The notes beneath the pieces were generated by a model, which saw only the letters and a program-made list of their open reading frames with translations, ran no database searches and was not told the DNA's origin. A DNA stretch of 63,718 nt, counting the filler, from Octopus bimaculoides (lineage: Eukaryota), in NCBI RefSeq assembly GCF_001194135.2. It is 3 parts of 3 records of this genome, joined end to end, with 100 filler letters (N's around TTAATTAATTAA, not from the genome) between each part and the next. Parts side by side here need not be neighbours in the genome. Positions count along the whole stretch, not along the records: positions 51,534 to 63,718 come from NC_069002.1; 2 more parts are not named here. One strand, 5' to 3'. Of this stretch, positions 39,309 through 63,718 are shown piece after piece. The position numbers were made by a program, and so were the translations under genes. Each line of letters begins with the position of its first letter. The first letter of the stretch is position 1.

Positions 39309-39820
39309 AATGTTGTATGAGTATATGTNNNNNNNNNNGAAAAATGAAAAACGAGAAAAAAACAAAAAAAGTCACTCCTAAAGTTAAAGAAAAAGTGAAC
39401 TAAACAATAAGATCAATAAACTAGGAAAAGCGAACATCGTCCGAGAGTCCTGTTTTCTTCTCCATTCACCTTCTTTGCTAAAGTTAAACGTATTCCATTT
39501 CCTTGTCTGCAGGGTCATGTTAGTACGGAAAAAAAAAAGAAGTAATAACAACAAGAAGACGACAGCAGCAAAAGTAACGATAAAAAAAAATCAAAAAAAC
39601 AACAAGCAGAAAGCACAAACAAACAATAATAATAACAACATGAACGTTGTAGAAGAAAAAAGACAAGATAAATAAACATTTTAAAAGTAAAAAGAAAATA
39701 ATAAGTAACCAAAAAAAAAGAAGAGAAGATTTTAAAAAGAAATAGATGCAGAAAATATACGAAAATGCAAGAAACAAAGAGATACAAACTACAGGCAAAA
39801 GAAAGTGTATAATAATAATG

Positions 39821-39875
<55 letters not shown>

Positions 39876-40840
39876 TAATAATAATAATGAGAAGAAGAAG
39901 AAGAAGAAGAAGAAGAAGAAGAAGAAGAAGGGAGGGGGAGGAAATGATGAGGATGCAGATGAGAGGGAAAGAAACTAAAAAAATAAAAATTGATTTGATG
40001 ATGATGAAGACGAAAAAGGAGAAGACGAAAAGAAGAAGAATAGAAAGAGATGAAGAAGCAGATAATGAGAAGAGAAACTTAACAGCAAAAATTGATCGTG
40101 GTGGTGATGAGGATGATGATGATGAGGGAGAAGGAGGAGGAGGAGGAGGTAGAGGAAGAGGCAGAGGAGGAAAAGAAGAAGATTAAAAAATAGAAAGTAC
40201 ACAATAAAGTAATACTGAAAGAGTAAATGAAGAAAGAGATGAGAGAATGTATGATGGGCTAAAACAACGGAAAGAAATAATGAATAGATAAAGGGGAAAA
40301 AAATGGGGGGAAAAAAAAAGAGGAAGAAACAATAACGAAAATACACAAGCACAGACGAGTGTGCGTGCGCTAGTTAAGCTTGTAATGGCGTTTGCTGACA
40401 ACCATGTTGTCTTCGAAGAAGTTCTTAAAGCGGAAACGAGGCCGTAGGAAATTAGGAGACATGTCATTGGTTTCGAATCGTATCGAATTCAGTAATCAAT
40501 ATATTGATGGGATATAGTGATGAGTATTTGTTGGAATTATTTTTTAAAAGAAAATATATATATATGTATATATATTAAAATAAATAAAAATCAATTTTGA
40601 ACGTAAAATATCGGCAAAATTTATCCATTCAGCCATATATGTATGATTCATCAATGTATGTTGTTGTTGTTGTTGTTGTTGTCGGTTGTTGTTGATGTTG
40701 TTGTTGTACACTACAAGTGAATACAAAGTTGTTTATATGATATCTATTTTCTGAATGTTTGAATGGAACATTTAAAAAAAATGGTATGTATGTATGTATG
40801 TATCTATGTATGTATATAAAAAACACATACACACACATAT

Positions 40841-40884
<44 letters not shown>

Positions 40885-41399
40885 NNNNNNNNNNNNNNNN
40901 NNNNNNNNNNNNNNNNNNNNNNNNNNNNNNNNNNNNNNNNNNNNNNNNNNNNNNNNNNNNNNNNNNNNNNNNNNNNNNNNNNNNNNNNNNNNNNNNNNNN
41001 NNNNNNNNNNNNNNNNNNNNNNNNNNNNNNNNNNNNNNNNNNNNNNNNNNNNNNNNNNNNNNNNNNNNNNNNNNNNNNNNNNNNNNNNNNNNNNNNNNNN
41101 NNNNNNNNNNNNNNNNNNNNNNNNNNNNNNNNNNNNNNNNNNNNNNNNNNNNNNNNNNNNNNNNNNNNNNNNNNNNNNNNNNNNNNNNNNNNNNNNNNNN
41201 NNNNNNNNNNNNNNNNNNNNNNNNNNNNNNNNNNNNNNNNNNNNNNNNNNNNNNNNNNNNNNNNNNNNNNNNNNNNNNNNNNNNNNNNNNNNNNNNNNNN
41301 NNNNNNNNNNNNNNNNNNNNNNNNNNNNNNNNNNNNNNNNNNNNNNNNNNNNNNNNNNNNNNNNNNNNNNNNNNNNNNNNNNNNNNNNNNNNNNNNNNN

Positions 41400-51020: not shown

Positions 51021-51929
51021 AAAACATGCATACGTATAAGCAAATATATGTGCAGACGGATATGTGCATTTATGTGTAGACAAAAGAGCGCGCGCGAACA
51101 CACACACACACACACACATGTCTACATAAAAAGAGCGTACACTGTATGCGCCAAATGCAAATGGGCCGACATGACATGTCCTTTTGTACAGGTGAGATTA
51201 CAGAAAGTCTTCTACAGGTTAAAATGTGTATAACTTGGAACGGTAGTGGAAGTATGATAGTTGCGGGACATTGTAATGGCAAAGGTTGGCAGGGGATGTA
51301 AGTTGTTACATTAGACGTAGCTGCATGGGAAATATCTTTAAATGTGTAATGTCAGGTGTCTATATGTTGATAAGGAGGTTCCGCATCATTGCTGGAAATT
51401 ACATACATACATACATAAATGTGTGTGTATATANNNNNNNNNNNNNNNNNNNNNNNNNNNNNNNNNNNNNNNNNNNNTTAATTAATTAANNNNNNNNNNN
51501 NNNNNNNNNNNNNNNNNNNNNNNNNNNNNNNNNGCAATTGGTAGCGGGAGATGAATTATGTCTTTGATAGGTACTCTGAGAGAATAGTAGTTATGGTAAC
51601 ATATTTGTAAAGATGAAAAAAAAATATATAGACAATATAAAAAAAAACAAACAAAAGAGAAACAGAAAAACAGACAACGCCACAAAAAGAACAACAACAA
51701 CAACAACACTGACAAAAGCCAGGCAGCATTATGGAAATAATGGTAAAGCAAGCAAGGTGTGGAAACGGGTGAGGAATTAAATAGGAATATGGTTATAATG
51801 GAAGTAGCAACAATAGGAGTTGTGGTTTAGTCAAAGAGGTGTAAATATGTTTCCGAGAGGAAGAAAGAAGAAGAAGAGGAAAAAGGAGTCCATTTTATTT
51901 GGTTCTTTCTCTTCTCTTTCCATGCCCAG

Positions 51930-52002
51930 CTGAAGGAATATTTCCCCGTACGTTTCGTTTCGTATATTTTTGGCCCTCACGTTCATTAATGCCAAAAATA
52001 AG
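51930..52002 (+). CDS. Plus-strand exon candidate (73 nt, phase 1/2): EGIFPRTFRFVYFWPSRSLMPKI
   Basis: Long pyrimidine tract ending cccag, aag|gtaacc donor; only one frame is open. Confidence 0.25.
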
Positions 52003-53809
52003 GTAACCTTATATTCTTCACATTGTGAAGGAAACATGATTTTGGCCGTCAGAGAATTGGAAATCAAAATACATATATATATATATATATTATATATACA
52101 TATATACAAATATGTGTGTGTGTGTGTGTGTGTGTATGTGTGTGCATGTGTGTGCGTGTGTGTATAAAGATATATATATATATATATATAAAAATAGATA
52201 CATGTGTGTGTATGTGTGTGTGTGCATNNNNNNNNNNCTGGTGGTGGTGGTGGCAGTGTATGATTCCTTTGTAGAGAACAGAGAGAAGAGAGAGAGAAAG
52301 AGAGAGAACAGAGAGAGAGAAAGGGGTAGAGAGAACAGAGAGAGGGAGAGAAGGAAAGAAAAGAGAAAGGAAGGAAAGAAAGGAGGAAAGGAAGAAAGAA
52401 GGAAAGAAAGAGAGAAAGACAGACAGAAAATGAAGTGATAAAGTGATAGCTCACGACAGAGAGGGGGAGAGAGAGAGAGAGAGACAGACACAGAGATAGA
52501 GAGAGAAAGTGAGAGACGAAGAAAGAAAGAAAGAAAGAAAGAAAGAACGAATGAAAGAACGAAAGAAAGAAAGAAAGAAACAAAGAAAGAGAAGAGAGGA
52601 GATTGTCAGACAAAGAGAGAGAGAAGAATAGAGAAAGACAAAGAGAGTGAAAGAGATAGAGGGAGACAGAGAGTGTGAGGGAGACGCAGGCAGAGGGAGA
52701 ATGAGACAGATAGATAGAGACAGAAGGAAATTGAAAGAGTAAGGGAGACAGAGAGAAAGAGAGAAGCAGAGAGAAAGAGAGAAAGATAGAGAGAGAGAGA
52801 GTCAGATAAAGAGAGAAAGACAAACGGACAGACAAACAGAGAGAAACGAGGGGGGTAAGTAGGGAACAAGAGGCAAAGAAAAAGGAGGGAGAGTGTTTGG
52901 TGAGAGTGCAGATTGAGTTAATGGCGGACGCCAGAGGGAATGGTGGAGNNNNNNNNNNNNNNNNNNNNNNNNNNNNNNNNNNNNNNNNNNNNNNNNNNNN
53001 NNNNNNNNNNNNNNNNNNNNNNNNNNNNNNNNNNNNNNNNNNNNNNNNNNNNNNNNNNNNNNNNNNNNNNNNNNNNNNNNNNNNNNNNNNNNNNNNNNNN
53101 NNNNNNNNNNNNNNNNNNNNNNNNNNNNNNNNNNNNNNNNNNNNNNNNNNNNNNNNNNNNNNNNNNNNNNNNNNNNNNNNNNNNNNNNNNNNNNNNNNNN
53201 NNNNNNNNNNNNNNNNNNNNNNNNNNNNNNNNNNNNNNNNNNNNNNNNNNNNNNNNNNNNNNNNNNNNNNNNNNNNNNNNNNNNNNNNNNNNNNNNNNNN
53301 NNNNNNNNNNNNNNNNNNNNNNNNNNNNNNNNNNNNNNNNNNNNNNNNNNNNNNNNNNNNNNNNNNNNNNNNNNNNNNNNNNNNNNNNNNNNNNNNNNNN
53401 NNNNNNNNNNNNNNNNNNNNNNNNNNNNNNNNNNNNNNNNNNNNNNNNNNNNNNNNNNNNNNNNNNNNNNNNNNNNNNNNNNNNNNNNNNNNNNNNNNNN
53501 NNNNNNNNNNNNNNNNNNNNNNNNNNNNNNNNNNNNNNNNNNNNNNNNNNNNNNNNNNNNNNNNNNNNNNNNNNNNNNNNNNNNNNNNNNNNNNNNNNNN
53601 NNNNNNNNNNNNNNNNNNNNNNNNNNNNNNNNNNNNNNNNNNNNNNNNNNNNNNNNNNNNNNNNNNNNNNNNNNNNNNNNNNNNNNNNNNNNNNNNNNNN
53701 NNNNNNNNNNNNNNNNNNNNNNNNNNNNNNNNNNNNNNNNNNNNNNNNNNNNNNNNNNNNNNNNNNNNNNNNNNNNNNNNNNNNNNNNNNNNNNNNNNNN
53801 NNNNNNNNN

Positions 53810-53842
<33 letters not shown>

Positions 53843-54557
53843 AATTATGTTGTTTTGAGTAATTCTTAATTGATGTAGAATTCGATCAATCATTATTATG
53901 GGTCGGTAGAATATTGAAAGAAGGAACTATCTTTTAATTAACATGAAACAAACCATCTTTGAATTAATATGACCAAGATGAAAAACTCAAACGTCCATTG
54001 TTATCTCTTAGATTTCCTGATGTTATTCCATCTTTTTAGTCTACCATAAAACCATAGATTTACTTCACTACCAAGACAAAACCTTAGATCAATGGAATGG
54101 TAAAAAAAAAATATATAAAAATGGCAGAAAGCCAGACAGAATATTTTGATATATATAATTATGTTAATTCATATGTTTGTGTTCAAATCCTTATGGAATT
54201 AATATTTATTCCCCATCATACCTTGGGGCCAATAATTAAGTACATACCAAATATTGGGGGTTGATTCAACAAACTGGTCATATCCAATAAATGGTATGAC
54301 CCTATACAAAAAAAAAGATTGTTGTCTTTAGTAAAATATAACCTAAAATAACTTATAAGTGAAGGCCCTTAAATTTCAAGCCCCCTGTAGTGAATGTTCC
54401 CTGCCTTTAATCCTTTAGCATTTAAACTAACTATATCTGGCTCAAATATTCTACCTTTTTTTTTTATCTGTTCGCACCAGCCATATCCAGCCTCTCACAC
54501 CTATCCTACAATGAAAATAAACAATCACATTGTCAAAATCATGAAGCTATGAGATAA

Positions 54558-54896
54558 AAAGAACCCCTTCAGTGATGACTGACCATGGGATTGCACCTGG
54601 AAAGTTACCCTCTGAGGCACAAGTCTAGGCAAGGTTGTTTATAGAAGACCAACAGTTGCCCATGCATACCAGCAGCCCCTCTTCATGTCACTGATGTTAA
54701 CCAAGAGAGAGGCAAAGGGGCCGATACAGCTTGGAACCTGTGACGTCGCAATTCATTTCTACAGCTGAGTGAACTGGAGCAATGTGAAATAAAGTGTCTT
54801 GTTCAAGAACACAACACACAGTCTGGTCCGGGAATTGAACTCACTACCTCCTGATTGTAAGCCCCACACTCTAACCACTGAGCCATGCACCATCAC
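54558..54896 (-). mobile_element. SINE with CORE-like centre inserted in MITE unit 1; 9-bp TSD
   Basis: TSD atgagataa at 54549-54557 and 54897-54905; cttgaacaagacactttatttcacattgctccagttcactcagctg on the minus strand. Confidence 0.9.
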
Positions 54897-55316
54897 ATGA
54901 GATAATTCTGAATGCTAAAGAATTAAACTAGCCATATCTGGCCTTAAATATTAAAACTGTTTTATGTTCAAACTGGCCAGATCCAGCCTCTCACACGTAT
55001 CCTACAATGTCATTAAAAAATAAACACTTACATCATTAAAATCTCTAAGCGCTAAGATAATGCAAGATTAATCAAAATTATGTGAATAAATAAGCATTAT
55101 ATTTGACTGAGTAATCCAAATGCTAACGGGTTAAACCAGCTATATCCAACCCAAGGGCTCTACTTGTTTTGTGGTGAAACTGGCCAGCTCTGGCCTCTCA
55201 AACCTACTCTACAGTGTCATTCAAAAAGTAAAACAATCACATCATCGAAATCTCAAAGCTACAAGATAATGAAGGATTAATTCAAAACAATGTGAATAAA
55301 CATGCATTACATTAGA

Positions 55317-55317
<1 letters not shown>

Positions 55318-55358
<41 letters not shown>

Positions 55359-55636
55359 TTAACGTCCGCTTTCCATGCTAGCATGGGTTGGACGATTCGA
55401 CTGAGGACTGGTGAAACCGGATGGCTACACCAGGCTCCAATCTGATTTGGCAGAGTTTCTACAGCTGGATGCCCTTCCTAACGCCAACCACTCCGAGAGT
55501 GTAGTGGGTGCTTTTACATGCCACTGGCACGAAGGCCAGTCAGGCGGTACTGGCAACTGCCACACTTGAAATGGTGTCTTTTACGTGCCACCTGCACAGG
55601 AGCCAGTCCAGTGGCACTGGCAACGATCTCGCTCAA
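55318..55636 (-). mobile_element. Family B copy inserted in MITE unit 3
   Basis: (cat)n-ttaacgtccgctttccatgctagcatgggttggacg...gcccttcctaacgccaaccactccgag. Confidence 0.9.
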
Positions 55637-55864
55637 CGCTAAAAGGTTAAGCCAGCCATTTCCAACCTAGATATTCCACCTGTTTTATGTTCAAAACTGG
55701 TCAGATCTAGCCTCTCACACTTACCTACAATGTCAATCTAAAAATAAGCCATCATCAAAATCTTAAAGCTATAAGATAATGCATAATTAATTGAAAACAA
55801 TTTAAATAAATACGCATCACATTTGACAGAGTGATCTGAATGCACAAGGGTGAGTCCTAAGTTA

Positions 55865-56205
55865 TTACCATGCCCAGACAACCATTATCCAAGACTAAAC
55901 ACACGATCTCCAGTGAACAAACTTAGCCATGTTATCATTCCTCCTTCTCTATTCCTTTTGGGCCGGTTTGCTGCACTCACTCACAACATTTGATATTCTT
56001 TCATTTTTGCAATCCACACGGACACCAAAAATGGGGTGATTCACTGCTCATATCTATTTGGAACTTGATGTAATTAGTTCTCTGAGCTCATTCCTGGCCA
56101 CTGCATATCAGTGCTGCCTCGGTGCATCCTTTCAGATCACTTTTCCTTAACCATCTCCAGATGTTGGTCTTGTCTTTCCCTTTATAGCTAATGAAAGTTA
56201 TCTGA
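55865..56205 (-). mobile_element. R4/Dong LINE fragment (pre-RLE zinc-knuckle region)
   Basis: DKTNIWRWLRKSDLKGCTEA..QE...RTNYIKFQID..SESP, then ..VVSECSK.AQKE.RRRND. Confidence 0.8.
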
Positions 56206-56368
56206 GGCATGGGTATTGCTTGTTTAAAATTGTTGTTGTTGTTGCTGTTGCTTTGGTTATTGCTGTTGTTGTTAATTGTAGCGCCACATAATCAAAGACA
56301 AAGACGTTGAATTCCATTGTACTTTGTGCCTGCCAATAACATCTGTCCTGTTAATTCCCTGCCGAAAC

Positions 56369-56377
56369 TCATTTTAG
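56369..56377 (-). CDS. Possible terminal coding exon of gene A (LK-stop)
   Basis: Pyrimidine-rich gctcctcacag acceptor about 160 nt downstream of the previous donor, then cta aaa tga. Confidence 0.35.
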   Translation of the reverse strand, partial: LK

Positions 56378-56538
56378 CTGTGAGGAGCATCACAGAAGAT
56401 TTTTAAAAAAAAAAGGCAAAAGATAAGCAGGCAACAGATGTCAGCCACCTTAACTGATAATCACAAGATTGTGTCAGTTGTCTCAACTGACCACCAACTG
56501 ACCCTCACTCTAAAATGTAGAATAAAGCATGGCCTTAC

Positions 56539-56577
56539 CACTTTTAGTTTCAGCAAGGATTTCTGGAATCTTTCAGG
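56539..56577 (-). CDS. Gene A exon (39 nt, 0/0): PERFQKSLLKLKV
   Basis: tttctttttattttag acceptor, gtg|gtaagg donor. Confidence 0.8.
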
Positions 56578-56889
56578 CTAAAATAAAAAGAAATGACAAA
56601 TTATGAATAATTTAAGCATACCCCACCCCACTTACACACACACACGCACATATATATTAGGTTGTCAAGAAAGTTCTTGCGGAATTTTTAATTTTGGTTT
56701 TAAATTATGTATTTTCAAATTAATTTTTGTTAAATTACTTTGACTTTATATACCATTTTAAGCCCATTTTTCGCTCCATCTAATCGTGTTACTCTTTTTC
56801 TTTTTGAATAATTAGGCCTTTTTTCTGGAACATTGAATACAACTTGAACAAAAAGCAAATTCACACAATTTTCTTATTCTAGTTCAAGC

Positions 56890-57020
56890 TGGGCTGGAGC
56901 CTCGTGGAGCTTTAGGTGTTTTCGCTCAATAAACACTCACAACACCCGGTCTGGGAATCGAAACTGCGATCCTATGACCGCGAGTCTGCTGCCCTATCCA
57001 CTGGGCCATTGCGCCTCCAC
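56890..57020 (-). mobile_element. SINE family E, 5' part
   Basis: Near-identical to 47460-47584. Confidence 0.9.
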
Positions 57021-57189
57021 AGAGGTCCCTTATAAACATGATCAAAAGGACATCTTTGGACAAATTAGTGATATTTTAACAATTAAAGGCAGATCAGGAA
57101 ACAATGCTGTGAAACTGTCTTAAAATTGCCCCAAGTTGTTTATTTTACTTATTCAATGGTTGAGGAGGAAAACGGTTACTTTTACTTAC

Positions 57190-57258
57190 ATTTATGGCAT
57201 AAGAATCCAGTTTCACAAATATCTTTTGCTTTGCTGATGCTTTTTCATAGTCTTTGGT
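57190..57258 (-). CDS. Gene A exon (69 nt, 0/0): TKDYEKASAKQKIFVKLDSYAIN
   Basis: ctttcatttataattccag acceptor, aat|gtaagt donor. Confidence 0.85.
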
Positions 57259-57743
57259 CTGGAATTATAAATGAAAGATTAACGATATTAAGTAGAATTG
57301 TTATTTTTACTTTCAGTACATGATCTCCTAATTAGTCAAGAAGTTATCAGATAATAGACTTAGTGGAAACATTGGGGATCAGGCAGCTGGAGGGGGGAAG
57401 GGCCATATCAGCACTACATTGGTCCTCATTTTCAGCTGAATAAACTGGAGCAACAAAAAATGAAATACCCTGCTCAAGAACATGGTTTAGGAATTGAATA
57501 CACAACCTTTTAATTGTGTATTAATGGGAGGGGATAAGTCGATTATATCAGCCCCAGTGTTTCACTGGTACATCAAAATCTCAAGGCTCTGAAACAAAGC
57601 ATGGTTAATTCAAAACAAGGTGAATAGATAAGAATTACATTTGAGAGAGTAATCTGAATGCTAAAGGTTTAATTAGCAATGTTAACTAAACAAAACTAAT
57701 AATAAATTGCCAAAAAATTAAAAAGAAATCCTGGAATACTTAC

Positions 57744-57830
57744 AAGTGCCATTGATGCTTTCTTTTGTTGTATGGATTCTTGTTCTTCAGCAAACAAGCT
57801 CTCCTGACTTATCTCATCAGATGGTTGAGA
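57744..57830 (-). CDS. Gene A exon (87 nt, 0/0): SQPSDEISQESLFAEEQESIQQKKASMAL
   Basis: ctaat branch-like motif, ttcttctatgcattcag acceptor, ctt|gtaagt donor. Confidence 0.85.
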
Positions 57831-57889
57831 CTGAATGCATAGAAGAATATATTAAGATTAGAGTTAAAAAAGAAAGAAAAAAGAAAAAA

Positions 57890-58130
57890 GGTAAAGTCCC
57901 TTCTTAAGTCACGGAGACTCATAAGGGCCAGTTTCTTGGTTTCTGTGGCGTAAATATTCCCCCACCTGGATGGGATGCTGGTCCATCACAGGATTATTCA
58001 TTTTTGCTGGCCGAGTGGACTAGAGTAACGTGAAATGAAGTGTTCTGCTCAGTTCAGGAATTGAAACCACAAACTTACAATCATTAGTCCAACACCCCTA
58101 ACCACTGAGCCACACACACCTCCACAAGAC
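57890..58130 (-). mobile_element. SINE (family F) with CORE-like centre and taaaggtaaag-type tail
   Basis: tRNA head gtggctcagtggttagggg...ggtttcaattcc; ttcatttcacgttactctagtccactcggccagc; tail gggactttacctttt. Confidence 0.75.
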
Positions 58131-58544
58131 TGGAGAGGGAATTCAAAGAGTTAAAAGTAGGGTTCTGGCAAGAGTTAGCACTTACACCTTAGAGGGGAAC
58201 TTTCTAGGTGCAATCCCATGCTCATTCTTGACTGAAGGGGTTCTTTGCCCTTATCCTTTACCCTATGCATCTTTTCTATAGCAAGACACTTCTGTTTTTG
58301 CCCCTTGTATAAAGTCACCTCTCCGCTCTCTCAACCACTTCCCCCATCACTTACTCAAGAGAGATTTTTGCTTTTCTTTGTTCTTTCCTGTCTTGCAAAT
58401 TACTTGGGAACCATACAAGTGGTGATGACATGATAAAAGTCCGCAATACACACTGTAAAGTGGTTAGCATTAGGAACGGCATTCGTCCATAGAAACCATT
58501 GCAAAGCTGACATTGCATAAGTTCAAAATTAGCATTTTAAAAGT

Positions 58545-58790
58545 CATAAATTAGTGCTGTAAACGCGTGATATTAGTATCACAAATGTATTAAATTAGTG
58601 TCATAAATGTGTCATATTAGTACTACAAAAGTATTCAATCAGTATCATAAAATGTTATATTAGTACCAATAAGTACCAAATTAGTGTCAAAAAAGTGCCA
58701 TATTAGTTCCCAAAAGTACTTAACTAGTGTCATAAAAATGTTATATTAGTACCAAATTAGTATCATAAAAGTGCCAGATTAGTGTCATCA
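58545..58790. repeat. Degenerate ~20-21-bp minisatellite
   Basis: About 12 recurrences of attagt(g/a)(t/c)ca..aaa..gt.. Confidence 0.85.
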
Positions 58791-58800
58791 AAGAACTCAC

Positions 58801-58878
58801 CAAAGATTCCTCTGATACTTCTAATTCTTCATTGATTTGTTCAGTTGATCTTTTTTCAAGTGCATGTGGTTCTTTTAC
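58801..58878 (-). CDS. Gene A exon (78 nt, 0/0): VKEPHALEKRSTEQINEELEVSEESL
   Basis: ttttcttttaattcttcag acceptor, ttg|gtgagt donor. Confidence 0.85.
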
Positions 58879-59630
58879 CTGAAGAATTAAAAGAAAAATG
58901 GAGAACGGTGCATTTGCAATGAATTGCAGATTAGCAAGTCACTGTACTTTAGCAGATGGTGGTGCAACAACAGATGCATGTGCACTGACAGATTATGTTG
59001 CACTGACATGTAATGGTGCACAGTGCATAAGCGAATATGCAGGCCATGGCATCTTTACAATGGTAACTGAAGAAGAAAGTGGGGTAGTAGGAGGAGGACA
59101 AGGAAGAGGTGAAGGAGAGAAGGATATAGCAGAAAGAGGAGAGGTAGAAGGAAGAAGAGGAGAGGGAGGAAGAGGAGGGGAGGAAGATGAGAAAAGGATA
59201 TAAGAGAAAGAAGAAAAATAAGAAAACGGAGGAAGAGGAAGAAGAGAAAGTGAAGGCAAAAAAAGATGAAGAGAAGGAAAAGGAGGCAGAGGAGGAAGAG
59301 GAAAAGGAAAAGAAGGAGGAGGAAAATGCAGAAGAGGGAAAAGAGGAGGAGGAGGAAGAGGAAGAGCAGAAGAGGAAAAAGAAGAGAAGGAGGAGGAAAA
59401 TTCAGAAGAGGGAAAGGAGGAGGAGGACAACCACAAGGAAGTGGAAAAGGAGGGGAAGAGGGGAGGATGAAGAGGAAATCGTGGGGAGGAAGGAAAGAAG
59501 AAGAAAAAGAAGAAGAAGAATATAGCGGCAGCAGGATGAGAATTAGATGGAGTGGAAAGGTATGTGACAGCTAGCTCCGGCTGATGATGATGATGATGAT
59601 GATGATTAATCCAAAGACTCAGTCACTTAC

Positions 59631-59678
59631 AACATATGTTTCAGAAGGAAATTTCTTAATTTCTGGTTTCTTTTCTCT
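59631..59678 (-). CDS. Gene A exon (48 nt, 0/0): REKKPEIKKFPSETYV
   Basis: cttctgtttctttccag acceptor, gtt|gtaagt donor. Confidence 0.8.
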
Positions 59679-59834
59679 CTGGAAAGAAACAGAAGATTTA
59701 CTATTAATATTTCTTAATTCTTCAGATATACAATTATTAAGTCTTAATTAGTGGTTCCTGAAGAAAACAATAAATGAAGGAATTAAACAAGGTTTAATAA
59801 ATCTGTAATTATCTTCCTTTTCTTTTTAATCTTT

Positions 59835-60225
59835 TTATTTGTTACAGTCATTAGACTGTGGCCATGCTGGAGCACCACATTGAAGAACTTTCAGTTGGAT
59901 GAATCAACCCTAGTACTTATTTTTTTAAAGCCTGGTACTTATTCTGTTGATCTCTTTTGTCGAACAGCTAAGTTATGGGGATGTAAACACACTAACATGG
60001 GTTGTCAAGCAGTGGTGGGGGACAAGCAATTGCAAAGACACACACACATGCACACACACATCAAGGATGAGCTTCTTTCAGTTTTTGTTTATCAAACTCA
60101 CCTGCAAGTTTATGGTTGGTCCAAGGCTATAGTAGAAGATACATATACAAGGTGCTATGCTGTGGTACTGAACCTGGAACTATGTAGTTGGGAAACAAGC
60201 TTCTTACCCCATAGCCACACCAGTG

Positions 60226-60228
<3 letters not shown>
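59835..60228 (-). mobile_element. SINE family A, near full length
   Basis: Tail gactgtggccatgctggagcacc, internal (CA)n, head. Confidence 0.9.
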
Positions 60229-60257
<29 letters not shown>

Positions 60258-60265
<8 letters not shown>

Positions 60266-60401
60266 GCACTCCGTCGCTTATGACGACGAGGGTTCTAGTT
60301 GATCCGATGAACGGAACAGCCTGCTCGTGAAATTAACGTGCAAGTGGCTGAGCACTCCACAGACACGTGTACCCTTAATGTAATTCTCGGGGATATTCAG
60401 C
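60258..60401 (-). mobile_element. SINE family E, 3' part, up to the gap
   Basis: gttggcactccgtcgcttatgacgacgagggtt...ggggatattcagc. Confidence 0.9.
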
Positions 60402-61765
60402 NNNNNNNNNNNNNNNNNNNNNNNNNNNNNNNNNNNNNNNNNNNNNNNNNNNNNNNNNNNNNNNNNNNNNNNNNNNNNNNNNNNNNNNNNNNNNNNNNNN
60501 NNNNNNNNNNNNNNNNNNNNNNNNNNNNNNNNNNNNNNNNNNNNNNNNNNNNNNNNNNNNNNNNNNNNNNNNNNNNNNNNNNNNNNNNNNNNNNNNNNNN
60601 NNNNNNNNNNNNNNNNNNNNNNNNNNNNNNNNNNNNNNNNNNNNNNNNNNNNNNNNNNNNNNNNNNNNNNNNNNNNNNNNNNNNNNNNNNNNNNNNNNNN
60701 NNNNNNNNNNNNNNNNNNNNNNNNNNNNNNNNNNNNNNNNNNNNNNNNNNNNNNNNNNNNNNNNNNNNNNNNNNNNNNNNNNNNNNNNNNNNNNNNNNNN
60801 NNNNNNNNNNNNNNNNNNNNNNNNNNNNNNNNNNNNNNNNNNNNNNNNNNNNNNNNNNNNNNNNNNNNNNNNNNNNNNNNNNNNNNNNNNNNNNNNNNNN
60901 NNNNNNNNNNNNNNNNNNNNNNNNNNNNNNNNNNNNNNNNNNNNNNNNNNNNNNNNNNNNNNNNNNNNNNNNNNNNNNNNNNNNNNNNNNNNNNNNNNNN
61001 NNNNNNNNNNNNNNNNNNNNNNNNNNNNNNNNNNNNNNNNNNNNNNNNNNNNNNNNNNNNNNNNNNNNNNNNNNNNNNNNNNNNNNNNNNAAACCACAAT
61101 GACAAGAAAGGTTTTCATTTAGAGGAGCAAAATTTTGCCAGCATACCTTCAGGCTTGCATGAAGTTGGTCCTGATGTTGGAGTTGACTTTGCTCAAATAG
61201 CTGAACTGGCACCAGGTCCTGCATTCTGATGCTTCGTTTTCCCAGGAAAAAAAGGAAATGTTGCATCATTTTCAGTTTCTGTTTACCAAGTCCACTCACA
61301 AGGTTTTGGTGGGCCCAAGATTATAGAAGAGACTTGCCCAAGGTGCCATGTAGTGGGACTGAACCCAGAACTATGTGGTTGGGAAGCAAACTTCTTACCA
61401 CACGGCCAATCCTGCACTTAAACTCTTGTGAATAATTTTTGAAATCTGAATAATTTTATCTTTTTTCAGACCTATGACAATGGAATGTACAAATGTGAGA
61501 TGGTGATTCAGGAGAATCACGCAGACAGAGGCCTAATGACCCACCTTTTGTGCTCAACAATCAAAGGATTGAACATTGCAACCTGTACTGTGAACCCTTA
61601 CTTGTGATTGGTTGTTCAACCATGTCATAGGTTGAGTGGTCGACTGATGGTAGACAGACGTCATAGCAATATATGCTAGACAGACATTACAACAACGCAT
61701 TCAATGTATGGTAGACTGACATCAAAAACAAAAGATTGTATGCAATGATATAATTGTTTACTCAC

Positions 61766-61816
61766 AGCTGCAATGTTTCTTCTTTGGAAAACGAAATCTC
61801 TCACATATTCTGGGTC
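61766..61816 (-). CDS. Gene A exon (51 nt, 0/0): DPEYVRDFVFQRRNIAA
   Basis: cttttttcttccttag acceptor, gct|gtgagt donor, open frame. Confidence 0.8.
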
Positions 61817-61881
61817 CTAAGGAAGAAAAAAGTAACAACCATGTCATAATTATTTTGTCAAACTGTAAAACAACAACAGAC

Positions 61882-61911
61882 CATCTTGTTTGAGGATGTC
61901 CTGAGCTTATA
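61882..61911 (-). CDS. Possible extra gene A exon (30 nt, 0/0): YKLRTSSNKM
   Basis: atatcatttag acceptor and weak atg|gtctgt donor; leaves only a 65-nt intron to the next exon. Confidence 0.3.
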
Positions 61912-62054
61912 CTAAATGATATATAAATTGCAATGTTAGAGTATGATTATATACACATTCGAAAGTATGTAAGCACTACCAATTTGATATTCCTGCTATC
62001 TGGTATGAACACCCTCCTGGGCCAGTGGCTGAAGGCAAAAATGTCATCATCCTC

Positions 62055-62245
62055 TGGAGGCTTTCTGTCAACATTCACAGACCAATCTAGGTTACCTAAC
62101 CCAACATTACCATTAAAGACAAGAGAAAAGTACTTGTAAATTAACAGATGTAAGTGTCCCTTCTGAAAATAATATATCTGTCGAGGAATTTGACAAACTG
62201 AGTAAATACAAGGATCTAGAAATTGAAACATAAAAGATGTGGTAT
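62055..62245 (+). mobile_element. R4/Dong RLE fragment, subfamily 1
   Basis: PNITIKDK and TDVSVPSENNISVEEFDKLSKYKDLEIET.KMW. Confidence 0.8.
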
Positions 62246-62289
62246 CTTTTGCTATTGGTTTCATAAAATAAAAGAGATGCCAGAAACAT

Positions 62290-63017
62290 GCCAGAAATAT
62301 GTGCAAGGAGAGAAGGTGTCATCAAAATGTAGAGTATGGGGAATTAGGGATGAAACAATGGCAAACATTGTTGCAGAATGCTCCAAGTTGGCCAGGGGAG
62401 AATATGAAAAAAAGTGACACGACCAAGTTGTGAAAGTTTTGCAATAGAAGGTTTGTCAGAAATGAGTGTTTTAAGCTGGATTACTTGGTATAATCACAGG
62501 GGTTGAAAGAGCACTTGAATCAGCAAAATGCAAGATTTTATGAGATTTTCCATTTCAAATGGATAAGAAGATAGAAAATAATAAACCAAATATAATAATT
62601 GACAAGGAAAATCTAAGTTGCTTACTGATTGACCCATCATGTCTGTTTCATTCCAGGATTGTAAAGAAAGAAAACAAAAAAATTCTTAAAGAATACAATC
62701 CCTTAAAATTTGAAACTGCAAGAATTTGGAATATGAAAATTGTAAATGTTGTGCCTGTAATAATTGGTGCATAAAAGAATGTAAGTAATGATATAGACAA
62801 ATGATTGAAGGAGATTTGAATGGAATATCTTGTAAAGCTTCTACAGAAAGTTTGCCTCTTAGGAACTGGGAAAAATCATAGGAAGGTTTTTGAGCTCTTC
62901 AAGGCTTATTGAAATCATGTGAATAGCTAAGGTTACAGTAACTCGCCACCCACATAAATTCTACCAGGAATAAGACCAACCCCAAGACAAGTCAACCAAT
63001 AGCAATAATAATAATTA
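62290..63017 (+). mobile_element. R4/Dong 3' fragment, subfamily 2, with (AAT)n end
   Basis: KCRVWGIRDETMANIVAECSKLA...HDQV, KPNIIIDK...LLID, KEYNPLK, VVPVIIGA, LQKVCLLGTG. Confidence 0.9.
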
Positions 63018-63024
63018 TATCGAA

Positions 63025-63385
63025 CATTTCATTTCATTTTACTCATTTTATCTAGTTTCAGCTCATGAGCCCGCCATTTGGTGTTGCTACACAATTTTAC
63101 TTCACGAATTTTACTTCAGGAATTGACATTTGGTGCATGAGAGAGTTTGATGCAGCTGCCCTCATCTGCACCTACTGCTGTGAAGTTGGTTCATCTGGGA
63201 CACCTGACAGGAAGAGGTCCAACCTCATCTTGAAGACACCTACATCCACCGCATGCAGGTCTCTCAGGTCCTTCGGGAGGATATTGAAGAGTTGTGGACC
63301 TCTGAAGCCCAGGCTATTGCAGTATTTTGTCCTACATCTTGATGACAATTTGGAATCCATGACAAAAATTTGTATTTAATGTGAA
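63025..63385 (-). mobile_element. CR1/L2-group LINE 3' end
   Basis: NSLGFRGPQLFNILPKDLRDL...FKMRLDLFLSGVPDEP...RAAASNSL with an (AAATG)n-like tail. Confidence 0.85.
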
Positions 63386-63631
63386 GGCTTGACATAGTTA
63401 ATAAAAGACATTCCAGGTGTGTGAATGGTATTTTAATCTATTGAACCCAAAGTTCAGCACAGGCAGGGTTTGAACTCAGAACATAAAGAGTTAAAAGGTT
63501 ATAATTAAATACTTCACCAATCTACCATATTAGACTCAAATTATAATTATTGCGCCATCAAATTAAATGAAGCAAGGAATGAACAAGATTGAATTATATG
63601 TGTTTAGAGTTTAATTAAAATATATTTTTAC

Positions 63632-63667
63632 CTGGAATTTCTTTTTCTCTCTCTTCTTAAAAGTCAG
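63632..63667 (-). CDS. Gene A exon (36 nt, phase 0/0): LTFKKREKKKFQ
   Basis: Minus strand: poly-T tract ...tttttag acceptor, cag|gtaaaa donor, open frame joining the next exons in phase 0. Confidence 0.75.
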
Positions 63668-63718
63668 CTAAAAAAAAAAAAAAAAAGAACGTTGTAGAAT
63701 TGTCCAGTTGAAAGAGCA

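What the first reader, a model, noticed from the sequence alone, without database searches (positions are those of the whole stretch)
56369..63667. Hidden minus-strand gene built from very short, all phase-0 exons
Seven exons of 36-87 nt, each with near-consensus acceptor and GT donor and all phase 0/0, splice to one open frame: LTFKKREKKKFQ-DPEYVRDFVFQRRNIAA-REKKPEIKKFPSETYV-VKEPHALEKRSTEQINEELEVSEESL-SQPSDEISQESLFAEEQESIQQKKASMAL-TKDYEKASAKQKIFVKLDSYAIN-PERFQKSLLKLKV (136 aa). None appears as this frame in the ORF track. I recognise no family. The region goes basic, then acidic/disordered, then a helical-looking end. Uniform phase means any exon could be skipped in frame (inference: combinatorial alternative splicing). 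The gene probably continues beyond the window end.
Basis: partly seen in the sequence, partly recalled or inferred. Interest (0 to 1): 0.75.

Follow-up and report, generated by a model that had tools for sequence, protein, structure and literature searches.

The report
Known octopus gene's seven short exons

Summary
All seven minus-strand exons (36, 51, 48, 78, 87, 69 and 39 nt) have YAG acceptors with pyrimidine tracts and GTRAG or GTAAA donors, and all are phase 0/0. Their joined 136 aa match residues 280-415 of XP_014775265.1 at 100% without gaps. That is residues 950-1085 of XP_014775265.2, 'trichohyalin [Octopus bimaculoides]', 1255 aa, UniProt A0A0L8IIP2.

The piece is identical to GCA_001194135.2 CM046622.1. 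The gene has 24 coding exons, and these are numbers 13-19 within a run of nine 0/0 exons.

O. sinensis has the same seven exons with the same lengths and splice sites. Between the two species there are no indels, codon-position differences are 11/6/19, and dN/dS is 0.28-0.45.

The N gap lies inside intron 14. The frame does not depend on it. The fully sequenced O. sinensis intron holds no candidate exon.

No Pfam domain, PDB relative or homologue outside Octopus was found. AlphaFold gives isolated helices in a disordered chain. The names 'trichohyalin' and 'titin-like' reflect composition only.

Combinatorial splicing has no support: each species has one annotated product that keeps all seven exons, and 0/0 symmetry alone does not predict skipping.

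Verdict: an ordinary, already annotated gene segment.

The parts
63668..63718 (-). 3' end of intron 12 (T-rich tract and AG acceptor); the piece starts here, directly after an assembly gap
63632..63667 (-). coding exon 13 of 24, 36 nt, phase 0/0, LTFKKREKKKFQ (aa 950-961 of XP_014775265.2)
   Evidence: O. sinensis orthologue L001 36525-36560 has the same length and splice sites
61817..63631 (-). intron 13, 1815 nt, with degenerate retroelement-like ORF fragments
61766..61816 (-). coding exon 14, 51 nt, phase 0/0, DPEYVRDFVFQRRNIAA
59679..61765 (-). intron 14, 2087 nt as assembled, containing the N gap 60402-61090, which is flanked by two same-orientation SINE-like copies
59631..59678 (-). coding exon 15, 48 nt, phase 0/0, REKKPEIKKFPSETYV
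58879..59630 (-). intron 15, 752 nt, mostly CT-rich low-complexity repeat on this strand
58801..58878 (-). coding exon 16, 78 nt, phase 0/0, VKEPHALEKRSTEQINEELEVSEESL
57831..58800 (-). intron 16, 970 nt, with a 22/43/86-nt tandem array and a SINE-like element
57744..57830 (-). coding exon 17, 87 nt, phase 0/0, SQPSDEISQESLFAEEQESIQQKKASMAL
57259..57743 (-). intron 17, 485 nt
57190..57258 (-). coding exon 18, 69 nt, phase 0/0, TKDYEKASAKQKIFVKLDSYAIN
56578..57189 (-). intron 18, 612 nt
56539..56577 (-). coding exon 19, 39 nt, phase 0/0, PERFQKSLLKLKV
51534..56538 (-). 5' part of intron 19 (13.2 kb in the chromosome assembly), made of repeats and two N gaps; exon 20 (NRIFDTLQ...) lies beyond the piece

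Best explanation
The seven segments are canonical GT-AG internal coding exons, numbers 13-19 of 24. They belong to one Octopus bimaculoides protein-coding gene that is already annotated: XP_014775265.2 'trichohyalin', UniProt A0A0L8IIP2, 1255 aa, about 67 kb, on the minus strand of CM046622.1. Spliced in order, they encode residues 950-1085. This segment is a polyampholyte with 39% charged residues. It lies between an E/R/K/G-rich repeat (exon 7) and a better conserved, more hydrophobic C-terminal part (exon 23). Shown: the exon boundaries, identity to the annotated product, the same exons in O. sinensis, and preservation of frame, length and splice sites under relaxed purifying selection. Inferred: the segment works as a flexible charged linker or scaffold. 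It would carry a few short conserved helix-prone motifs (DPEYVRDFVFQRR; ISQESLF.EEQESIQQKKASMAL; KQKIFVKLDSYAINP.RFQKSLLKLKV) that bind partners, plus basic clusters (KKREKKK) that look like nuclear-localisation or polyanion-binding patches. Exons in such a region can be short and symmetric because nothing has to fold across their borders. They are most likely spliced constitutively. The cellular function of the protein is not known. The confidence given is for the identification as exons 13-19 of this gene; confidence in the linker/scaffold function is far lower.
For: The peptide is 136/136 identical, without gaps, to XP_014775265.1 residues 280-415. The same sequence is in the 1255-aa XP_014775265.2 / A0A0L8IIP2. 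The piece is identical over 12,185 positions (N runs included) to L002 49940-62124 of GCA_001194135.2. The first 22 of the 23 junctions of the 24-exon model were fitted against XP_014775265.2 by script; junction 23 found no solution in that run and its boundaries (exon 23, 161 nt; exon 24, 40 nt with the stop codon) are taken. A full-length retranslation of the final exon set was not rerun. This gives intron phases 0,0,0,0,0,2,2,1,1,1, then ten 0s, then 2,0,2. In O. sinensis (L001, XP_036367993.1) the seven exons have identical lengths, identical AG acceptors and identical donor hexamers. Between the species there are 36 nucleotide differences in 408 nt, split 11/6/19 by codon position. There are 17 amino-acid differences against 25.4 expected under neutral evolution (P=0.04), no stop codon (P=0.17 under neutrality), and 0 indels against 5.3 expected from the intron rate (P=0.005). 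dN/dS is 0.28-0.45 by four methods. Exons 9-24 total 1487 nt with identical exon lengths in both species and dN/dS 0.48-0.65. Disorder: the segment falls on the disordered side of the charge-hydropathy plot. The AlphaFold2 model has mean pLDDT 48 and pTM 0.18, with only isolated helices. No Pfam family was found.
Against: No transcript evidence could be examined here; the annotated models are predictions. Overall substitution in the exons (8.8%) is no lower than in the aligned introns (8.3%), so constraint on the protein is weak. No homologue outside Octopus and no domain was found, so the functional statement rests on composition and conservation pattern only. The AlphaFold run used a two-sequence alignment, which by itself gives low confidence.
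Confidence: 0.93

Rival explanations
1. The exons form a cassette array that is alternatively spliced in many combinations. Uniform phase 0 lets any subset be skipped in frame, producing a family of linker lengths and charge patterns. This reading can coexist with the main explanation.
For: Nine consecutive 0/0 exons (12-20), each 36-105 nt, encode a disordered region. In human data, alternative symmetric exons tend to encode the most disordered regions (PMC3632108). The O. vulgaris model omits O. bimaculoides exons 4-6 elsewhere in the gene. That could be exon skipping or an annotation difference.
Against: The O. bimaculoides (two versions), O. sinensis and O. vulgaris products all contain all seven exons, and the 90% clusters hold no exon-skipped isoform. 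The splice sites are strong and identical in the two species compared at DNA level. (0,0) exons are not enriched among human alternative exons: 22.4% against 24.9% of constitutive exons. Symmetry permits skipping but is not evidence for it.
Confidence: 0.12
2. The chain is a chance concatenation of AG...GT open segments, or a mis-annotated non-coding or decaying locus, and is not translated into a functional protein.
For: The exon substitution rate equals the intron rate. There is no domain and no relative outside Octopus. No transcript data could be seen here.
Against: There are 13 rule-passing candidates on the minus strand against 1 on the plus strand and a simulated mean of 1.4. No indel occurs in 1487 nt of exons 9-24, while introns open a gap every 77 nt on average. 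Differences show codon-position periodicity, dN/dS is below 1, and there are no stop codons in two species at DNA level; the O. vulgaris protein model also reads through these exons. All 14 splice dinucleotides and the donor hexamers are conserved.
Confidence: 0.04
3. The assembly gap at 60402-61090 hides an additional coding exon, so the true protein has extra residues between ...RRNIAA and REKKPE...
For: The gap is unread sequence of estimated length inside the intron. It persists in the chromosome-scale assembly.
Against: The orthologous O. sinensis intron is fully sequenced (1061 nt, no N) and contains no phase-0 open segment passing the splice rule. The gap's flanks align to O. sinensis 39576-40383 and 40707-41257, leaving only 323 nt opposite the gap region. 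O. sinensis and O. vulgaris proteins have the same direct AA|REKK junction. The gap is bracketed by two copies of one SINE-like element, a typical cause of assembly breaks.
Confidence: 0.03

Closest known systems
RefSeq XP_014775265.2 / UniProt A0A0L8IIP2 (O. bimaculoides 'trichohyalin'), with orthologues XP_036367993.1 (O. sinensis 'titin-like') and CAI9739105.1 (O. vulgaris hypothetical protein)
   Same: This is the same gene. The window peptide equals residues 950-1085. The exon chain is identical, and the orthologues are 88% identical over the 136 aa.
   Different: Nothing differs. The finding re-derives part of an existing model. The O. sinensis model (512 aa) starts with a different first exon and lacks the part matching O. 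bimaculoides residues 1-742.
Mammalian trichohyalin (S100 fused-type protein)
   Same: It shares an extreme Glu/Arg/Lys-rich repetitive segment, which in the octopus gene lies in exon 7, outside the window. This is presumably why NCBI chose the name.
   Different: There is no S100/EF-hand domain. The octopus coding sequence is split into 24 exons. The window segment is not repetitive. The similarity is compositional, not homology.
Titin PEVK region (many short symmetric exons encoding a charged disordered spring, with heavy exon skipping)
   Same: The gene architecture is similar: a run of short, same-phase exons encoding a charged, unfolded segment.
   Different: No Ig, FN3 or kinase domain is present. 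P+E+V+K make up about 39% of the 136 aa, so it is not PEVK-like. The exons are not repeats of one another. No exon skipping is documented.
Mostly disordered proteins assembled from successive symmetric (0,0) exons (Schad, Kalmar and Tompa 2013, PMC3632108)
   Same: A run of nine successive 0/0 exons encodes a region predicted to be disordered.
   Different: [quoted passage not shown] No similarity between the exons was detected here. At 12-29 aa, the exons are also shorter than the human mean of about 43 aa for successive (0,0) exons.

Membership tests
Annotated gene model XP_014775265 (O. bimaculoides) | The joined peptide is identical to the annotated product, and the exons map to the same genomic positions | tested here: met
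   136/136 identity without gaps. The piece is identical to L002 49940-62124. The first 22 of the 23 junctions of the 24-exon model were fitted against the 1255-aa protein; the last junction's boundaries come.
Trichohyalin / S100 fused-type proteins | N-terminal S100 EF-hand pair | tested here: not met
   Pfam scans of the 1255-aa, 1166-aa and 512-aa proteins found no family at E<=1.
Trichohyalin / S100 fused-type proteins | Long Glu/Arg/Gln-rich tandem repeats | tested here: inconclusive
   Residues 501-600 are 44% E and 34% K+R, which matches in composition only. BLASTP self-comparison with composition correction found no repeats. The window segment itself has no such repeat.
Titin | Ig-like and fibronectin type III domains, and a kinase domain | tested here: not met
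   No Pfam hit and no PDB sequence relative.
Titin PEVK-type exon array | Exons are diverged copies of a repeat rich in P, E, V and K | tested here: not met
   P 4%, E 15%, K 15% and V 5% (counted from the sequence). No self-similarity at E<=0.01.
Disordered proteins built from successive symmetric exons (PMC3632108) | Successive exons of the same symmetric phase class | tested here: met
   Exons 12-20 are all 0/0, bounded by ten consecutive phase-0 introns.
Disordered proteins built from successive symmetric exons (PMC3632108) | Encoded region predicted to be mostly disordered | tested here: met
   The segment is on the disordered side of the charge-hydropathy plot. AlphaFold2 gives pLDDT below 50 for 378 of 585 residues and pTM 0.18. 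The caveat is the two-sequence alignment.
Alternatively spliced cassette-exon array | Isoforms that lack individual exons | tested here: not met
   All four annotated products from three species keep all seven exons, and the clusters hold no other isoform. This test covers annotation only.
Alternatively spliced cassette-exon array | Exon-skipping junction reads in RNA-seq or long reads | not testable with these tools

The most novel reading that the evidence does not exclude
An Octopus-restricted, rapidly evolving disordered protein uses its run of nine in-phase mini-exons as a combinatorial splicing module. This would tune linker length and charge pattern between tissues. A conserved SINE-derived, exon-like 51-nt phase-0 segment in intron 16 could be a further cassette in the making.
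Probability: 0.08. Interest if true: 0.4.

Novelty: already known. Interest (0 to 1): 0.12.

Why it matters
The finding matters little as a discovery. It shows that the first-stage reader can recover a correct multi-exon eukaryotic gene model from raw sequence. However, the model has been in RefSeq and UniProt for years. The gene itself is uncharacterised. It has no domain and no detectable relative outside Octopus, and it evolves quickly (dN/dS 0.3-0.65). It is therefore one of many lineage-restricted disordered proteins in cephalopods. It would be worth a look only if expression data single it out.

Tried and rejected
1. The word-indexed protein search found nothing with the 136-aa peptide or with the C-terminal 72 aa. 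Both results are false negatives, because the database holds proteins containing these exact sequences. Its negatives were therefore disregarded.

2. Pfam on the peptide and on the 512-, 1166- and 1255-aa proteins found no family. NCBIfam gave only a far sub-threshold hit. PDB sequence searches gave nothing meaningful.

3. Rfam at gathering and at E<=1 gave only sub-threshold chance hits on TA repeats. ARAGORN found no tRNA.

4. The O. vulgaris locus could not be fetched because the gene range exceeds 100 kb. XP_014775265.1 is not on record as a gene product.

5. tblastn of the N-terminal 760 aa against the O. sinensis locus found nothing within the 10-kb upstream flank.

6. Self-comparison for exon duplication was negative.

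7. Nucleotide conservation as an exon test fails. Exons are 91.2% identical and aligned introns 91.7%. Indels, codon periodicity and dN/dS were used instead.

8. A fold search was not run. The AlphaFold model (pTM 0.18) is too poor for meaningful matches.

9. Literature searches for the accessions and for 'octopus trichohyalin' found nothing relevant.

10. My first PWM acceptor score missed exons 17-19. It was replaced by a simpler rule.
Full report
**1. The observation**

The exons lie at:
- 63667-63632 (36 nt)
- 61816-61766 (51 nt)
- 59678-59631 (48 nt)
- 58878-58801 (78 nt)
- 57830-57744 (87 nt)
- 57258-57190 (69 nt)
- 56577-56539 (39 nt)

Each is preceded by [CT]AG, with 11-16 pyrimidines among the 16 bases at -20 to -5. 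Each is followed by GTAAGT, GTGAGT, GTAAGG or GTAAAA. All lengths are multiples of three and open in frame 0.

I then applied a fixed rule: that acceptor, a GTRAR donor, length 30-150 nt, and an open phase-0 frame. It gives 13 candidates on the minus strand (10 distinct acceptors), 1 on the plus strand, and a mean of 1.4 (maximum 7) in 300 first-order Markov simulations. The rule was set after seeing the exons, so this only shows the background rate. The extra minus-strand candidates lie in repeats and are hydrophobic.

**2. Identity**

A full HMMER search of 1.84 billion representative proteins with the joined 136 aa returned one hit, P0001. It has E=5.9e-64, 88% identity and a single stretch, query 1-136 against 207-342.
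- P0001 is XP_036367993.1, 'titin-like [Octopus sinensis]'.
- Its relative P0002 is XP_014775265.1, 'PREDICTED: trichohyalin-like [Octopus bimaculoides]'.
- The current version of that protein is XP_014775265.2 / UniProt A0A0L8IIP2, 1255 aa. An O. vulgaris orthologue, CAI9739105.1 (1166 aa), also exists.

The locus that encodes the 1255-aa protein is L002, from GCA_001194135.2 CM046622.1. It contains the piece with no mismatch over all 12,185 positions (N runs included), at L002 49940-62124 and bounded by N gaps on both sides. The 'hidden' gene is therefore an annotated one.

**3. Gene structure**

I fitted exon boundaries to canonical AG/GT sites so that the translation follows the 1255-aa protein. 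The script solved junctions 1-22; junction 23 failed in that run, and I took its boundaries from the earlier trial (exon 23, 161 nt; exon 24, 40 nt with the stop codon). The full-length retranslation of the final set was not rerun. This gives 24 coding exons over about 67 kb.

The intron phases are 0,0,0,0,0,2,2,1,1,1, then ten 0s, then 2,0,2. The window holds exons 13-19 (residues 950-1085), inside a run of nine 0/0 exons (12-20; 63, 36, 51, 48, 78, 87, 69, 39 and 105 nt). Exons 1-12 lie beyond 63718. Exon 20 lies 13.2 kb downstream of exon 19, beyond 51534.

How unusual is the run? With the human phase-0 frequency of 46.3% (PMC3632108), a run of ten or more phase-0 introns among 23 has P of about 0.004. 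Given this gene's own 16 of 23 phase-0 introns, P is about 0.055. That is mildly unusual but not remarkable. Successive (0,0) exons are common and tend to encode disordered regions.

**4. The assembly gap**

The N run 60402-61090 lies inside intron 14 (59679-61765). Exon 14 ends in phase 0 and exon 15 starts in phase 0, so the frame does not depend on the gap's length. The same gap persists in the chromosome-scale assembly.

In O. sinensis the orthologous intron is fully sequenced: 1061 nt with no N. It has no open phase-0 segment that passes the splice rule. The gap's flanks align to O. sinensis 39576-40383 and 40707-41257, leaving 323 nt opposite the gap region.

Both the O. sinensis and O. 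vulgaris proteins join ...RRSIAA directly to REKKPE.... Two same-orientation copies of one SINE-like element, 80% identical, bracket the gap, which is a plausible cause of the assembly break. I find no sign of a hidden exon.

**5. Is it a constrained coding sequence?**

In O. sinensis (L001) all seven exons have the same lengths, the same AG acceptors and the same donor hexamers.

Nucleotide conservation alone does not separate exons from introns. Exons differ at 36 of 408 positions (8.8%). Orthologous intron blocks differ at 374 of 4529 aligned positions (8.3%).

The pattern of change, however, is that of a coding sequence:
- Differences fall 11/6/19 on codon positions 1/2/3 (P=0.03 for position 3).
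- There are 17 amino-acid changes against 25.4 expected under the intron-derived mutation spectrum (P=0.04).
- No stop codon arose, which happens in 17% of neutral simulations.
- There are no indels, although introns open a gap every 77 nt on average (5.3 expected; P=0.005).

dN/dS is 0.28 (NG86), 0.44 (LWL85), 0.45 (YN00) and 0.29 (ML). Over exons 9-24, the two species have 1487 nt with identical exon lengths and dN/dS 0.48-0.65. The exons are therefore maintained as coding sequence, but under relaxed constraint.

I could not see transcript data. The RefSeq, UniProt and ENA models are predictions.

**6. What the protein is**

No Pfam family matches the peptide or the 512-, 1166- or 1255-aa proteins. 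There is no meaningful NCBIfam hit and no PDB sequence relative. The only relatives found are in Octopus.

From my own knowledge, few cephalopod proteomes other than Octopus are in public protein databases. 'Octopus-restricted' therefore means 'not detectable in other molluscs', not 'absent from squids'.

Composition: the 136 aa are 15% K, 15% E, 10% S and 39% charged overall. Net charge per exon is +5, 0, +2, -5, -4, +2, +3. The segment falls on the disordered side of the charge-hydropathy boundary.

AlphaFold2 on XP_014775265.1 with its O. sinensis orthologue gives mean pLDDT 48 and pTM 0.18, with no compact fold. Within the window segment it shows:
- helices over exon 13 and over exon 14 into exon 15 (pLDDT 62-75);
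- coil from exon 15 to the first third of exon 17 (pLDDT 31-45);
- one long helix across exons 17-18 (pLDDT about 70);
- short, low-confidence helices at the end.

The exons are not copies of one another.

Across species, exons 13-15, 17 and 19 are the best kept within the window (90-94%). Exons 11, 21 and 23 are the best kept in the gene (94-96%). Exons 7-9 are the most variable, at about 41-64%.

Basic clusters of the K[KR]x[KR] type occur at residues 158, 162, 209, 354, 883, 954 (exon 13), 1170 and 1248. One RVxF-like KVRF lies at 774. These are motif matches only.

**7. Most likely mechanism**

Shown: these are canonical, conserved internal coding exons of an annotated gene.

Inferred: the segment is a flexible, highly charged linker or scaffold with a few conserved helix-prone motifs for partner binding, plus basic patches that could direct nuclear import or bind polyanions. 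Short symmetric exons are tolerated there because no fold spans their borders. This fits the link between exon symmetry and disorder described for human genes (PMC3632108).

The names 'trichohyalin' and 'titin-like' reflect composition. They come from the E/R/K-rich exon 7, which is 44% E in residues 501-600. They do not reflect homology, because no S100, Ig, FN3 or kinase domain is present.

**8. Alternative splicing**

Uniform phase permits in-frame skipping, but nothing available here shows that it happens. All four annotated products in three species contain all seven exons, and no other isoform is in their clusters. The splice sites are strong and conserved. In human data (0,0) exons make up 22.4% of alternative and 24.9% of constitutive exons, so symmetry of this class does not predict skipping. 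The question needs junction reads.

**9. Verdict**

Its splicing inference is untested. This is an already annotated, uncharacterised, lineage-restricted disordered protein gene, and the interest is low.

Noticed in passing
window 58079-58129 (-) and L001 45986-46036: A SINE-derived segment in intron 16 passes the same splice rule: YAG acceptor, GTRAR donor, 51 nt, open in phase 0 (SCGGVCGSVVRGVGLMI). The orthologous O. sinensis copy, about 245 nt upstream of exon 17, does too (SGGGVCGSVVRSVGLMI). No annotated model uses it. It could be a candidate for exonisation, or the signals may simply belong to the SINE consensus.
   Followed up: partly
window 61290-61425 and 60110-60245 (-): Two same-orientation copies of one SINE-like element, 80% identical, flank the N gap 60402-61090. 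This probably explains why the assembly breaks there. ARAGORN and Rfam do not call them tRNA-like.
   Followed up: yes
window 59034-59550, 52273-52824, 58539-58756, 55317-55358: The introns hold long purine/pyrimidine-skewed low-complexity tracts (GA-rich on the plus strand, periods 15/30/74 and 4/8/22), a 22/43/86-nt AT-rich tandem array, and (CAT)14. The GA-rich tract gives long spurious plus-strand ORFs rich in E, K and R at 59187-59574.
   Followed up: partly
window 63172-63360 (-), 62223-62417 (+) and 62559-62774 (+): ORF fragments in intron 13 (…GPQLFNILPKDLRDL…FKMRLDLFLSGVPDEP; …NVVPVIIGA) remind me of the C-terminal tails of invertebrate non-LTR retrotransposon ORFs. Pfam found no family for them, so this rests on memory alone.
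   Followed up: partly
L002 24624-28053 (O. bimaculoides exons 4-6), and exon 16 at window 58801-58878: The O. vulgaris model (CAI9739105.1) lacks most of the residues of O. bimaculoides exons 4-6. It also lacks two residues (HA) inside exon 16. The O. sinensis RefSeq model (512 aa) starts with a different first exon and lacks everything upstream of exon 9. These could be annotation differences, real skipping or 5' truncation; this was not resolved.
   Followed up: partly
window exons 13-19 compared with L001: Third codon positions differ at 19 of 136 sites (14%), and dS is 0.13-0.23. Both exceed the aligned intron divergence of 8.3%. Total exon divergence equals intron divergence. The cause could be chance with few sites, mutational context in A-rich codons, or alignment bias in the introns.
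   Followed up: no
tool behaviour (searches compared with 17-19): The word-indexed protein search returned no candidates for two peptides that are exact substrings of proteins in its own database. Its negative results for short or low-complexity queries are not informative.
   Followed up: yes
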